The notes: a model not told the origin generated them from the letters alone. 64,000 bases of DNA from Dimorphilus gyrociliatus (GCA_904063045.1 CAJFCJ010000007.1:4099404-4163403); one strand, 5' to 3'; counted from the stretch's first letter, positions 43,533 through 49,431 are shown. Program-made: numbers and translations.

Positions 43533-43600
43533 CTTAGCCGATTTCTGAATCAAGAGCTAAAAAGCAGGTAAACTTTCAATTAGTCCAGGTAAAGTCATAA

Positions 43601-43745
43601 CCGGAAGTTCGGACATATTGGGATATTTTCGTATTATTTATTTGAAATTTTTAAAAAATTTAGCATTTATAATAATATCGCCTTCTTTTAATTCGGACTG
43701 ATTTTACGAAACTTGTACTTTAAATCTAGGTGGCATCACTTCCGG
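43601..43745. promoter_or_regulatory. Two oppositely oriented ETS sites and a CTCF-like core in the quiver-like/LUC7L divergent promoter
   Basis: CCGGAAGT at 43601-43608; CACTTCCGG at 43737-43745; CTAGGTGGCA inside 43723-43736. Confidence 0.5.
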
Positions 43746-43815
43746 TTCAATCGTTGGTCCGTCGATTTTTTGTATCATTAAACAAGCGTATTGCACTCAT
43801 AGGACTGCGGCAAAC

Positions 43816-45397
43816 ATGTCTGCAGCAGATCAGGTGCGGGCGATGCTCGACGAGCTCATGGGTACTAATCGAGATGGTGAGATTGATTTTATTTCATGAT
43901 TTAAAAATGATCACCTAAAGCGTATAATAAAGAAATATTTTCAGCATCATATAAACTTTATTATGAAAATGATTGTAGGATTTTATGAATATGCAGATGA
44001 CAGTTGTAACCGAAACCGTTTTATTTTTTACCCAGAATAAGTGAAAAAATGAACGCGGAAAATAATAGGGCAGACAGTAAATCTCCGGGCATTCCGTGAG
44101 TTAATAACTTGTATCGATTACGTAATGTTTTATTTTATAACCCTATTTTTTGACAAAAAAAAATGGTTGGGTTGTAAGGTAAAAACATCTTAGGTCAAAA
44201 AATTATAAACATAAAAATAAGAGGGGTTTTGGTGAGTATTAAAAAATTCCCCTAAATCCACTCGCAGCTGCCCAAGATTAGAAATTATCGGTGTTCGTCG
44301 TGCGTATGTGTACATTTTTTCTATATTGTAATAGAGTTTAGAGAAAAGCAAACGAATAGGTCTTTTTGGGACATATCAAAAAGTTTTTCATCATAATCTA
44401 CGCAACAGGTGTAATAAAGAGGGAACAGCAAATTCTTTTTGACGATCCAAGAGTTTGTAAGAGCTTTCTTCTGGGTTGCTGTCCTCACGACATTTTAGCG
44501 AGCACAGTAAGTTTATACGAGAATTATTTTTTAAAAATATTACGTTACGTTTTTAACATTTAAACTGTTATGTTTAGAGAGCTGATTTGGGTGACTGTAG
44601 AAAAATTCATGATTTGGGACTTCGTGCGGATTATGAGCAAGCAGCCAAGAGGAAAGATCACTTTTATGATGTTGAAGCGGCTGAACAACTTCAAGCTTTC
44701 ATCAATGACTGTGACAGGAAAATAGAAGTAGCAAAAAAAAAATTGAAGGAGACGCAGCAAGAACTTGGGGAAGATGCTCTCGCAAAAGGTAATTGAAGTA
44801 ATTAAATATTTAATTTCCTAAGAAATTACCTTTGCAGGGGATGATATTCATGCACTCGGTGAACAAATTGGAACAAAACTCGCTAAAGCTGAAGAGTTGG
44901 GCGCCGAGGGACGAGTAGAGGAATCTCTAGCCCTTATGGAGGAAGTAGAAAATCTGAAAAAGAGGAAAGCTGATTCGGAAGTTGAATATCGCAATGCTAT
45001 ACCGGCCTCTTGTTACCAACAACAAAAACTTCGTGTTTGTGAAGTGTGTGCAGCCTATTTGGGTATTCATGATAATGATAGACGATTAGCTGATCATTTT
45101 GGTGGAAAGTTGCACCTGGGGTTTATTGAGATTCGACAGAAATTAGACGATTTTAGCCAAAATCTAATGGAGCGTAGATTAGAAAAAGAAAAAGCCAGAA
45201 GCAGTCGACGCGATGATCGACGAGATAGGAGGTCACGTAGCAGAAGCCGTGAACAGTATCGAGACAAAAGACGCAGCCGGAGTAGGGACCGACACCGTAG
45301 AAAGCATAGAAGTCGTTCTAAGAGCAGAGACAGAAAGCGCAAGTCAAAGGACAAGCGCAAGCGGTCAAGATCAAGGAGCAGGTCTAATTCTCGCTAA
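43816..45397 (+). CDS. LUC7L: Luc7-like U1 snRNP-associated protein (LUC7L/LUC7L2 type)
   Basis: MSAADQVRAMLDELMGTNRDG; RVCKSFLLGCCPHDIL; KLRVCEVCAAYLGIHDNDRRLADHFGGKLHLGF; RS tail; four constitutive exons. Confidence 0.95.
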
Positions 45398-45788: not shown

Positions 45789-46772
45789 ATGGCAGAACGC
45801 TTGCGTAGAATTCGGACACATCTCTCGGCTAAACCTTGTGCCGTAGGAAGTCTTCAACACCACCAGGATGATAACTTCCAATATACCCTTAGTGGCAAAT
45901 CTGTTTTGACCAAGGAGCAGAGAGAATTCTACGAAAAAAATGGCTATTTAGTGATAAAAAAATTGGTTCCCCCAGAGAAAATTCAAAAATTTGTGGATAG
46001 ATTTGCTGAAATTGTTGAGAATAAAGACGATAAAGTTCCTGGTATGATTATTATGAGAGATGTTGCTGTAGCCAAAAAACTTGATATGGAACCGCATAAG
46101 GCTATAAATAAACTTCAAGACTTTCAAGAAGACCCTGTTTTATTCCAATATTGCTCTCTTCCAGAAATAATAAATTATCTTCCAAGCTTTATTGGAGATA
46201 ATATTATGGCTATGCACACTATGCTTATCAACAAACCACCAGATCCTGGTACCGATACATCTAGACATCCAATGCACCAAGATTTACATTACTTTCCTTT
46301 TCGGCCAGCCGAAAGGATAATATGTTCTTGGACGGCAATGCAAAAAATTAACCGTGAAAATGGATGCTTAGCCGTTATACCCGGATCACACAAAGGCGAA
46401 CTACTTAAGCATACTTATCCCTCTTGGAAGAAAGGTGTGAACAAGATGTATCATGGAGTAGAAGATTATGATCCCAAAATGCCGAGAGATTTCCTCGAAA
46501 TGGAACAAGGCGATACCGTCTTCTTCCATCCCCTTCTAATTCATGGTTCCGGATCCAATAAGACAAACGGATTTAGAAAAGCAATTTCCTGTCATTACGC
46601 CTCAAGTAATTGTGAGTACATTGATGTGGAAGGTACTGTGCAAGAGAACATTGCCAAAGAAGTTTTAGAAATAGCTTCTAGACGGGCAGGTGGACAAATT
46701 TCTGGTATTAAATATCACGATATTTGGAGATTTCGAGCAAGATTGGTTAACGGTGAAAAGGTGAATCTTTGA
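45789..46772 (+). CDS. PHYH: Phytanoyl-CoA dioxygenase, peroxisomal, intronless
   Basis: PTS2 RLRRIRTHL; [11 protein letters not shown]; [14 protein letters not shown] (HxD); [11 protein letters not shown]; [11 protein letters not shown]. Confidence 0.95.
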
Positions 46773-48613: not shown

Positions 48614-49431
48614 CGTCTGAAAGCAATTGTTAAATGATTGAAAATAATTTTAAATTAGAAAAGTGAAGGATGAATATGCGGGCGGAAGGGAACACATGGC
48701 TCTATTTGAAAAAAAATTCCCCCAGCAGTTGTTGATAGCGGCATTTCTAATTTCGTAATTATTATAAATATTTTAATATTACATTAAATTGTTAAGACAG
48801 CTGTGAAAATATAGGTACAATAAGATTTTTACAGGTACAAATTTTACACTCACGCCTATTCTTTATACTATCGCGTAATAAGTCACCTTCAATCTAATTT
48901 CATTTTTATCAAAAATGAAAGTTGATTAAATGTGCAAGTCCTCACTTCACTATTTAAGAATAAAAATGCCAAAGCTTTTACTGCCAATAAGGTGAAAACG
49001 TGTCATCAGTTTTGTTACTTGTTCTTGACATGATGAAAATATTATGAATGAAATAGTACAAAATATACCAGTTTTTACTGACACTTTCAGTTGAGAAACT
49101 GGAATAATTGTTAAACTAGAGTAATTTGCGCAGTACTGTTTTTTAAGCAAAAAATTTTAAAATAAAAAAATAATGTTACGAAACTCAATATCGTTTATTA
49201 ACAAAATTTTAAACATTATTACGAAACAATGAGACTTGAATAAAATATACAAAATTTTAGCTTGAATTCTTGAGAATGCAAAGTTCTTCAGATTCTAAAA
49301 CCTGAAAAAACCTGAAAACATATAAACAAATACAATCCTACTCTTAACTATATAACAATTTTTTTCATCTTTTCATATTTTTTTCCTACATTTTTTCATA
49401 TTTTTTTCTTTTTTCTTTTTTTTTTTTCTTT

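What the first reader, a model, noticed from the sequence alone, without database searches (positions are those of the whole stretch)
44036..44095. Poison cassette exon hidden in LUC7L intron 1
Seen: acceptor TTTTATTTTTTACCCAG|, a 60-nt exon, and donor TCC|GTGAGT. Exon 1 ends in phase 1 (GAT G), so inclusion reads G-AA TAA, an immediate stop. The donor has a poor exonic half and a perfect intronic half. Established: mammalian LUC7L/LUC7L2 auto- and cross-regulate via NMD-coupled exons near the 5' end, and are reported to favour 5' sites strong on the intron side. Inference: a deeply conserved or convergent LUC7 feedback loop in an invertebrate.
Basis: partly seen in the sequence, partly recalled or inferred. 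Interest (0 to 1): 0.7.

Follow-up and report, generated by a model that had tools for sequence, protein, structure and literature searches.

The report
Conserved poison exon in annelid LUC7L
The one long intron of the splicing-factor gene LUC7L in the tiny worm Dimorphilus gyrociliatus holds a 60-base stop-carrying mini-exon that is conserved better than the protein code, so the self-limiting switch known from mammalian LUC7L is probably old, although no RNA data could be consulted.

Summary
Window 43816-45397 (+) is the single LUC7L/LUC7L2-type gene of Dimorphilus gyrociliatus (DgyrCDS6681). Its intron 1 is 532 nt, against 71 and 49 nt for the other two introns.

The intron holds a pyrimidine-tract/CAG acceptor, a 60-nt unit (44036-44095) and a TCC|GTGAGT donor. 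Entered from phase 1, the unit reads TAA at once.

- **Chance:** composition-preserving shuffles of the intron give such a unit in 14 of 3000 trials.
- **Conservation:** in a related species (Logan contig L001), fourfold-degenerate sites differ at 56-59%. The 244-nt block around the unit has only 5 substitutions, 1 of them in the 60-nt unit, so it is better kept than the coding exons (80-92% identity).
- **Known RNA or coding sequence:** there is no Rfam match, no overall fold signal and no ORF.
- **Other lineages:** intron 1 holds a 59-61-nt unit ending in (C/G)C|GTGAGTT in two scallops, a pearl oyster (scallop profile E=1e-13) and the annelid Paralvinella.
- **Donor type:** the donor scores +3 on the "5'SS Balance" scale, as reported for the human LUC7L PTC exon.

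It is most likely a real NMD-coupled poison exon that gives LUC7L negative feedback. The scan has noted similar poison exons in other splicing-factor genes of this genome (SRSF10, PRP39, SNRNP48).

The parts
43816..43876 (+). LUC7L exon 1 coding part (MSAADQVRAMLDELMGTNRD + first base of Gly21), ending in phase 1. Donor is ATG|GTGAGA (5'SS Balance 0).
43877..44408 (+). Intron 1, 532 nt, about 8 times the genome's median intron (66 bp). The other introns of the gene are 71 and 49 nt.
43904..44035 (+). Upstream conserved flank of the cassette: 2 substitutions and one 2-nt indel against the relative. It ends in the pyrimidine tract and CAG acceptor (44019-44035).
44036..44095 (+). Candidate poison cassette exon, 60 nt, 67% purine. 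It has 1 substitution in 60 against the relative. In-frame stops are TAA at 44038-44040 and TGA at 44050-44052.
44096..44147 (+). Cassette donor TCC|GTGAGTTAA (right-handed, 5'SS Balance +3) and the conserved downstream flank (2 substitutions against the relative).
44123..44190 (+). Predicted hairpin starting about 30 nt downstream of the cassette donor. The arms are identical in the relative, while the loop differs in sequence and length. The 3' arm contains AAG|GTAAAA.
   Evidence: (z -4.8 in Dimorphilus, -3.6 in the relative)
44222..44360 (+). Second conserved block (95% ungapped identity). It opens with a second right-handed donor-like site, TTG|GTGAGTATT (GT at 44232, Balance +2). Used with the acceptor at 44036, that site would give a 196-nt exon with the same stops.
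44386..44408 (+). Conserved 3' end of intron 1 (22 of 23 identical), holding the acceptor of exon 2. Its pyrimidine tract is weaker than the cassette's.
44409..44506 (+). Exon 2 (start of zinc finger 1). It differs from the relative at 13 of 98 positions.
44578..44788 (+). Exon 3.
44838..45397 (+). Exon 4 (zinc finger 2 and RS tail) including the stop codon.

Best explanation
Window 44036-44095 is a real alternative 'poison' exon inside intron 1 of the only LUC7L/LUC7L2-type gene of Dimorphilus gyrociliatus.

Proposed mechanism:
1. When the exon is spliced in between exon 1 and exon 2, the reading frame meets TAA after one added codon. The message can then encode only 21 residues.
2. Three exon junctions lie downstream of that stop, so the message should be removed by nonsense-mediated decay.
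3. Inclusion depends on a donor with no consensus on the exon side and a full consensus on the intron side (TCC|GTGAGT). In human cells this is the class whose recognition by U1 snRNP is promoted by LUC7L/LUC7L2 and opposed by LUC7L3.
4. More LUC7L protein would therefore give more inclusion and less productive mRNA, which is a negative feedback loop. The LUC7L3-type paralogue is the likely antagonist.
5. The near-invariant flanks, the second GTGAGT site and the hairpin just downstream are taken to be the regulatory context of this choice.

Shown here: the anatomy, the stops, the donor class, the homologous intron position, very strong purifying selection, similar units in molluscs and another annelid, and the presence of UPF1 and UPF2.

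Inferred only: that the exon is used, that NMD follows, and that LUC7L controls inclusion.
For: - Gene model and phase.
- Stops in the cassette.
- It is the only strong acceptor/donor pairing in the intron. Chance level is 14 of 3000 shuffles, and GTGAGT is enriched at P=0.005.
- Against the relative L001, fourfold sites differ at 54 of 97 and 55 of 94. Exons are 80-92% identical and introns 2 and 3 are 54-71% identical without gaps. Block 43904-44147 has 5 substitutions and the cassette has 1 in 60. At 30% divergence the binomial P is 2e-30.
- It is the longest run at or above 93% identity in 13.7 kb of aligned sequence.
- The block is single copy in the genome.
- No substitution touches the tract, the AG, the stops or the donor.
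- The intron is 8 times the median length.
- The intron position and phase match Capitella, Paralvinella, three bivalves and a fish cDNA.
- Similar units of 59-61 nt ending in (C/G)C|GTGAGTT occur in Paralvinella, Mizuhopecten, Pecten and Pinctada. Each carries a stop or a frameshift.
- The bivalve unit is conserved between scallops and pearl oyster at E=1.1e-13, while the rest of the intron does not align.
- The human LUC7L PTC exon has Balance +3 and is promoted by LUC7L/LUC7L2 (PMC11842720).
- UPF1 and UPF2 are present. The genome has exactly one LUC7L-type and one LUC7L3-type gene.
Against:
- The whole 244-nt block is conserved evenly, so conservation does not single out the splice sites or the 60-nt unit from its flanks.
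- Only one relative is available, so substitution patterns are uninformative.
- Nucleotide similarity to the mollusc or Paralvinella units is not significant (31 of 500 and 80 of 300 shuffles reach the observed score; no hit in Dimorphilus).
- Capitella shows no clean unit.
- The unit is 60 nt, a multiple of three, unlike the frameshifting 59, 61 and 71-nt units elsewhere.
- NMD rules and LUC7 specificity are untested in annelids.
Confidence: 0.62

Rival explanations
1. The conserved blocks are a splicing-control module that works without producing a cassette-containing mRNA. The GTGAGT sites and the acceptor would act as decoys that hold U1/U2 on the intron. The result would be retention of intron 1 or nuclear detention of the transcript, which also lowers output.
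For: - Two conserved GTGAGT sites lie in one intron, together with a conserved hairpin.
- In mouse Luc7l, retention of introns 1 and 2 accompanies exon inclusion (PMC11648925).
- A grouper cDNA contig retains the 3' part of intron 1.
Against: - The acceptor is stronger than the one of exon 2, and it pairs with a donor at an ordinary exon length.
- The bivalve and Paralvinella units keep exon-like lengths of 59-61 nt.
- The outcome is still negative regulation, so this rival differs from the main reading only in the RNA species produced.
Confidence: 0.15
2. The block is a transcriptional element (a first-intron enhancer or promoter-proximal element) of LUC7L or a neighbouring gene, and the splice-site look is incidental.
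For: - It lies 90-330 nt downstream of the start codon, close to the promoter.
- The genome paper reports 944 ATAC-seq peaks in unusually long introns.
Against: - The block is 98% identical over 244 nt with almost no indels. The promoter/5'UTR stretch itself is only 82% identical.
- The strand-specific exon anatomy recurs in the same intron in molluscs and Paralvinella.
- That intron is where vertebrates keep their PTC exon.
Confidence: 0.08
3. The intron hosts a small non-coding RNA: a snoRNA in block A or B, or a miRNA-like hairpin at 44123-44190.
For: The hairpin has conserved arms and a diverged loop, with z -4.8 and -3.6. Rfam's weak best matches there are miRNA models.
Against: - No Rfam match comes near a gathering score; the best E-value is 0.49.
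- Blocks A and B fold no better than shuffles, with z -0.5 and -0.7.
- In the relative the stem is only about 18 bp and very AU-rich.
- A small RNA would not explain the 130 conserved bases upstream of the cassette.
Confidence: 0.04
4. It is a chance pseudo-exon: AT-rich introns throw up AG...GT pairs, and stops are frequent.
For: Stops are indeed cheap in sequence of 31% GC. In long introns of other species such a unit arises in 5-12% of shuffles.
Against: - In this 532-nt intron only 14 of 3000 shuffles give such a unit.
- Chance cannot explain 5 substitutions in 244 nt when silent sites differ at 56-59%.
Confidence: 0.03

Closest known systems
Vertebrate LUC7L PTC exon (mouse exon 2, 71 nt) and its homologue LUC7L2 alternative exon 2 (Kenny et al. 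2025, PMC11842720; PMC11648925; conservation beyond mammals in PMC3176834)
   Same: - Same gene subfamily.
- Same intron: after the exon that encodes the N-terminal helix, at phase 1 in the Gly codon of RDG.
- Small size.
- It abolishes the reading frame before both zinc fingers.
- The donor has zero consensus on the exon side and full consensus at +4 to +6 (5'SS Balance +3).
- The host is a U1-associated factor that favours exactly this donor class.
- A LUC7L3-type paralogue is present as a possible antagonist.
   Different: - 60 nt, a multiple of three, so it poisons by internal stops rather than by a frameshift.
- No nucleotide homology has been shown.
- Inclusion, NMD sensitivity and control by LUC7 proteins are untested.
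- There is only one LUC7L-type gene, so the loop would be pure autoregulation rather than cross-regulation between paralogues.
Ultraconserved poison exons of SR-protein and hnRNP genes (Lareau et al. 2007 and Ni et al. 2007, as cited in PMC9808567 and PMC11648925)
   Same: A stop-carrying cassette in a splicing-factor gene, with the exon and roughly 100 nt of each flank conserved more strongly than the coding exons.
   Different: Conservation is measured here against a single relative within one small annelid clade, not across a whole class. The regulator is a U1 snRNP accessory protein acting through the donor type, not an SR protein binding exonic enhancers.
Candidate 59-nt intron-1 exon of bivalve LUC7L (found here: Mizuhopecten L012 2649-2707, Pecten L013 2792-2850, Pinctada L020 4553-4611) and the 61-nt unit of Paralvinella (L006 6268-6328)
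   Same: Same intron, near-identical length, a pyrimidine tract followed by AG, a donor (C/G)C|GTGAGTT with Balance +3, and loss of the reading frame.
   Different: - The acceptor is AAG rather than CAG.
- The bivalve units shift the frame and carry no internal stop.
- Sequence similarity to Dimorphilus is not significant.
- These units are also without RNA evidence here.

Membership tests
NMD-coupled poison cassette exon of a splicing-factor gene | An internal unit bounded by a usable 3' splice site and 5' splice site inside an intron of the host gene | tested here: met
   A tract of 12 pyrimidines in 15 followed by CAG, and GTGAGT 60 nt later. It is the only such pairing in the intron and arises in 14 of 3000 shuffles.
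NMD-coupled poison cassette exon of a splicing-factor gene | Inclusion places a stop codon upstream of at least one exon junction by more than about 50 nt | tested here: met
   TAA at 44038-44040 lies 55 nt before the cassette's own downstream junction, and two further junctions follow.
NMD-coupled poison cassette exon of a splicing-factor gene | The exon and its flanks are conserved more strongly than neutral sequence | tested here: met
   5 substitutions in 244 nt, against 56-59% difference at fourfold sites.
NMD-coupled poison cassette exon of a splicing-factor gene | Inclusion isoform detected in RNA and stabilised when NMD is blocked | not testable with these tools
No cDNA contig of the gene is on record.
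NMD-coupled poison cassette exon of a splicing-factor gene | NMD machinery present in the organism | tested here: met
   UPF1 zinc-binding domain at E=4.7e-72 and Upf2 domain at E=9.8e-15 in the window's own genome.
LUC7L/LUC7L2 autoregulatory exon (vertebrate type) | Host is a LUC7L/LUC7L2-subfamily gene, not LUC7L3 | tested here: met
   Best relatives are named Luc7-like 1 or 2. The second locus of the genome carries LUC7L3-type sequence; assigning that type rests partly on my own recollection of human LUC7L3.
LUC7L/LUC7L2 autoregulatory exon (vertebrate type) | Lies in the first coding intron, before both zinc fingers | tested here: met
   The intron splits the Gly codon of RDG at phase 1 in Dimorphilus, Capitella, Paralvinella, three bivalves and a grouper cDNA contig. 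The mouse poison exon is exon 2.
LUC7L/LUC7L2 autoregulatory exon (vertebrate type) | Right-handed 5' splice site (Balance +3 in human) | tested here: met
   TCC|GTGAGT scores 0 on the exon side and 3 on the intron side, so +3 by the published definition.
LUC7L/LUC7L2 autoregulatory exon (vertebrate type) | Sequence homology with the vertebrate exon | not tested
   No vertebrate PTC-exon sequence could be fetched. Human sequence was not used. Similarity to mollusc and annelid units is not significant.
LUC7L/LUC7L2 autoregulatory exon (vertebrate type) | Inclusion raised by LUC7L/LUC7L2 and lowered by LUC7L3, dependent on the donor class | not testable with these tools
   Needs minigene or knockdown experiments.
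Intron-hosted snoRNA or miRNA | Match to a known RNA family, or a stable conserved fold covering the conserved block | tested here: not met
   Rfam's best E-value is 0.49, far below gathering scores. Blocks fold at z -0.5 and -0.7. Only a short AU-rich hairpin stands out.

The most novel reading that the evidence does not exclude
The LUC7L poison exon is an ancestral bilaterian device. A roughly 60-nt exon in the first coding intron, ending in a (C/G)C|GUGAGUU donor with no exon-side consensus, would have been kept for over half a billion years in annelids, molluscs and vertebrates. It would persist because it lets the LUC7L-type protein read its own abundance through the very class of splice site it promotes. 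On this reading, the right-handed/left-handed splice-site code and its feedback wiring both predate the protostome-deuterostome split.
Probability: 0.35. Interest if true: 0.7.

Novelty: new member of a known kind. Interest (0 to 1): 0.55.

Why it matters
LUC7 proteins were recently shown to split 5' splice sites into two classes and to regulate one another through a poison exon that carries a strongly 'right-handed' donor. That work concerns human cells and plants. In the papers I could search, the exon's conservation is documented only within vertebrates.

A counterpart in an annelid with a very compact genome, plus similar units in bivalves and another annelid, would show that the feedback logic is old rather than a vertebrate refinement. 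That logic is that the factor senses itself through its own preferred donor class.

It would also offer small, tractable test cases. The Dimorphilus intron is 532 nt with a 60-nt exon, which is suitable for minigene dissection of how donor class confers LUC7 dependence.

It further supports the scan's wider pattern that the rare long introns of this genome's RNA-processing genes are kept because they hold regulatory exons.

Tried and rejected
- **RNA evidence.** The annotated protein is on no cDNA contig on record.
- **cDNA contigs from other species.** Contigs fetched through N-terminally truncated products gave a grouper transcript retaining the 3' part of intron 1 and metatranscriptome contigs retaining intron 2. 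None showed a cassette.
- **Vertebrate locus.** Attempts to fetch a fish genomic locus failed, so the vertebrate PTC exon was never seen. No human sequence was fetched or compared.
- **Nucleotide homology.** Dimorphilus intron 1 against Capitella and Paralvinella gave nothing significant. Against the scallop blocks the score was reached by 80 of 300 shuffles, and the cassette-centred score by 31 of 500. A bivalve profile had its best hit on the Paralvinella candidate at only E=0.28 and gave no hit in Dimorphilus.
- **Known RNA families.** None.
- **Structured RNA across the blocks.** None.
- **Coding explanation.** Block A has no ORF of 40 aa or more. The minus-strand ORF in block B is broken by two 1-nt indels in the relative.
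- **Repeat or transposon.** The block is single copy in the genome.
- **More dinophilid relatives.** None in the protein collection. The Logan hits at 68-70% identity are insects.
- **Joined models.** Exons were searched separately by reference, and the database's own protein P0001 was used for the full-length search.

Full report
**What is in the sequence.** The window comes from Dimorphilus gyrociliatus. The gene on the + strand has four coding exons:
- exon 1, 43816-43876
- exon 2, 44409-44506
- exon 3, 44578-44788
- exon 4, 44838-45397

Exons 2, 3 and 4 each match Pfam LUC7. Exon 1 ends GAT G, which is phase 1. Intron 1 is 532 nt, while introns 2 and 3 are 71 and 49 nt. The genome's median intron is 66 bp (bioRxiv 10.1101/2020.05.07.078311).

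Inside intron 1 the acceptor ...TTTTATTTTTTACCCAG ends at 44035. Read in the main frame, the unit starts with TAA and has a TGA four codons later. I read the frames exon by exon and built no joined spliced model. Full-length searches used the database's own protein.

**Is it more than chance?**
- With strict criteria, the intron has a single acceptor-like site (44036) and two GTRAGT sites (44096 and 44232).
- GTGAGT occurs 12 times on the + strand of the 64 kb window. That predicts 0.10 in this intron, and two are present (P=0.005).
- A tract-AG / 55-75 nt / GTGAGT unit appears in 14 of 3000 composition-preserving shuffles of the intron.

The bare observation is therefore unusual, though not compelling alone.

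**Conservation.** A protein search with exon 4 found a 96% identical product on Logan contigs from four runs (SRR23372215, SRR23372216, SRR23372228, SRR23372231). One contig, L001, is 16.5 kb of genomic DNA with the same gene order (QVR-like, LUC7L, PhyH, riboflavin transporter). It belongs to a different species:
- Fourfold-degenerate sites differ at 54 of 97 in LUC7L and 55 of 94 in PhyH.
- The PhyH protein is 83% identical.

Against that background:

| Region | Identity or differences vs L001 |
|---|---|
| Coding exons | 80-92% identical |
| Promoter/5'UTR stretch | 82% identical |
| Introns 2 and 3 | 54-71% identical without gaps, many indels |
| Intron 1, 43904-44147 | 5 substitutions and one 2-nt indel |
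| The 60-nt unit | 1 substitution |
| Second block, 44222-44360 | 95% identical |
| Last 23 nt of the intron | 22 of 23 identical |

Over 13.7 kb of aligned sequence, the block around the unit is the longest run at or above 93% identity. At a conservative 30% neutral divergence, the probability of 5 or fewer changes in 243 sites is 2e-30. None of the changes touches the pyrimidine tract, the AG, the two stops or the donor. The block is single copy in the 77.9-Mb genome.

**What the block is not.**
- Rfam gives nothing near a gathering score (best E=0.49).
- Blocks A and B fold no better than shuffles (z -0.5 and -0.7).
- There is no ORF of 40 aa or more in block A. The minus-strand ORF across block B is broken by two single-base indels in the relative.

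One local structure does stand out. A hairpin at 44123-44190, starting about 30 nt after the donor, has arms identical in both species. Its loop differs in sequence and length (z -4.8 and -3.6). I treat it as part of the regulatory context, but its role is unknown.

**Comparison with the known system.** In human cells LUC7L carries a PTC exon and LUC7L2 a homologous alternative second exon. Both paralogues promote their inclusion and LUC7L3 represses it. The shared donor is 'right-handed' with 5'SS Balance +3, and swapping it for a left-handed donor abolishes regulation (PMC11842720). The mouse exon is 71 nt, is exon 2, shifts the frame and removes both zinc fingers (PMC11648925). The NMD-linked event is reported beyond mammals (PMC3176834).

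By the published definition, the Dimorphilus donors score as follows:

| Site | Sequence | 5'SS Balance |
|---|---|---|
| Cassette donor | TCC\|GTGAGT | +3 |
| Second site | TTG\|GTGAGT | +2 |
| Constitutive exon 1 donor | ATG\|GTGAGA | 0 |

Intron 1 splits the Gly codon of RDG at phase 1 in Dimorphilus, Capitella, Paralvinella, two scallops, Pinctada and a grouper cDNA contig. The candidate therefore sits in the homologous intron.

The genome has exactly two LUC7 loci: this one and a LUC7L3-type gene on contig 17. UPF1 and UPF2 are present.

**Other invertebrates.** Intron 1 is also by far the longest intron in Capitella (2.8 kb) and among the longest in Paralvinella, the scallops and Pinctada (2.6-4.4 kb).
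- *Scallops.* Between Mizuhopecten and Pecten, intron 1 contains blocks of 94% and 93% identity. That equals or exceeds exons 1 and 2, and the other introns show nothing comparable. The first block holds a 59-nt unit bounded by ...TTTTTGAAG and GCC|GTGAGTTGA, with one mismatch between the species. The unit is open but shifts the frame, so exon 2 then reads a TGA at its eighth codon.
- *Pinctada.* A profile of the scallop unit finds Pinctada intron 1 at E=1.1e-13, from the tract through the donor, while the rest of that intron does not align. The Pinctada unit is 59 nt and also shifts the frame. I saw no stop through exons 2 and 3 and did not follow it further.
- *Paralvinella.* The only GTRAGT in 4.3 kb of intron 1 is GCC|GTGAGTTGT. 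It lies 61 nt after ...TGTGTTTTTCAAG, and the unit has an in-frame TGA.
- *Capitella.* There is no clean unit, but four GTGAGT sites cluster in the last 280 nt of the intron.

Such units arise in 5-12% of shuffles of these longer introns. The non-Dimorphilus cases are therefore individually weak, except in bivalves, where conservation supports function.

Nucleotide similarity between Dimorphilus and any of them is not significant. The bivalve profile's best hit in 104 kb of sequence is the Paralvinella candidate, but only at E=0.28. Common descent with Dimorphilus is thus possible but not shown.

Many RNA-supported gene models of molluscs, a bryozoan, lamprey, fish and insects begin at the Met of MDLGEC in exon 3. 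That fits transcripts whose normal start is disabled, but it does not locate the cause.

**Mechanism proposed.**
1. Inclusion of 44036-44095 (or of 44036-44231, if the second donor is used) ends translation after 21 residues.
2. Three junctions then lie downstream of the stop, which should trigger NMD.
3. The donor is of the class that LUC7L-type proteins promote. High LUC7L should therefore raise inclusion and lower its own productive mRNA, and the LUC7L3-type paralogue should act the other way.

The steps shown are the anatomy, the stops, the donor class, the homologous position, the selection, and the presence of the NMD factors and both paralogues. The steps inferred are use of the exon, decay of the isoform, and control by LUC7L.

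**Limits.**
- No cDNA contig of the gene was on record.
- The cDNA contigs reached through truncated products in other species retained introns rather than showing a cassette.
No vertebrate genomic locus was obtained, and no human sequence was fetched or compared.

**Verdict.**

| Reading | Probability |
|---|---|
| Real, strongly conserved poison exon of LUC7L working as negative feedback (best explanation) | 0.62 |
| Decoy or retention variant of the same idea | 0.15 |
| Transcriptional element | 0.08 |
| Small RNA | 0.04 |
| Chance | 0.03 |

This is a new member of a known kind. Its main value is that it pushes the LUC7L feedback exon and its right-handed donor into annelids and, through the bivalve units found here, into molluscs.

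The scan has already reported poison exons of the same general kind in other splicing-factor genes of this genome (SRSF10, PRP39, SNRNP48, an eMIC regulator). This case fits that pattern and is not unique within it.

Noticed in passing
window 49177-49430: A 254-nt stretch is 95-96% identical to the relative's contig (L001 14482-14731). It is the only other run of this length and identity in 13.7 kb of aligned sequence.
   Followed up: no
window 44232-44270: The second conserved donor-like site, TTG|GTGAGTATT, is followed 22 nt later by ACTCGC. That is a near-complement of GTGAGT and pairs with it in the predicted fold of block B. It could mask either GTGAGT site.
   Followed up: no
window 44123-44190: An AU-rich hairpin has arms identical in the relative and a loop that differs in sequence and length. 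Its 3' arm contains a left-handed donor-like AAG|GTAAAA.
   Followed up: partly
L012 2569-2765 and 2966-3200; L013 2711-2908 and 3122-3356; L020 4527-4625: Bivalve LUC7L intron 1 holds blocks conserved as well as the exons. They include a 59-nt frameshifting unit with a GCC or GGC|GTGAGTT donor, shared by scallops and pearl oyster (E=1.1e-13).
   Followed up: partly
L005 5605-5850 (Capitella teleta LUC7L intron 1): All four GTGAGT sites of the 2.8-kb intron sit within its last 280 nt. No clean cassette could be delimited.
   Followed up: no
proteins P0005, P0009, P0045, P0100, P0027, P0003, P0012: LUC7L 'isoform X2' models and transcript-derived products from octopus, a bryozoan, lamprey, fish and marine metatranscriptomes all start at the Met of MDLGEC in exon 3, so they come from transcripts whose canonical start is unusable. 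Dimorphilus has Ala at that position (RADLGDC), so it lacks this downstream start.
   Followed up: partly
G000:C17:367965-368615 (-), locus L007: This is the second and only other LUC7 gene of the genome. It is of LUC7L3 type, with an N-terminus MAAAAAAALLDELMGRQRN and a zinc finger 2 reading CSVCGAFL...HLMGKQHMGY.
   Followed up: partly
window 45789-46772 (+): A single-exon phytanoyl-CoA dioxygenase (PhyH) gene starts 390 nt after the LUC7L stop. The relative keeps the same order, and the protein is 83% identical.
   Followed up: partly
window 43590-43610 and 43735-43750: Two ETS-type CCGGAAGT / ACTTCCGG motifs lie upstream of the LUC7L start codon. The second is conserved in the relative, and the promoter is likely here.
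   Followed up: no
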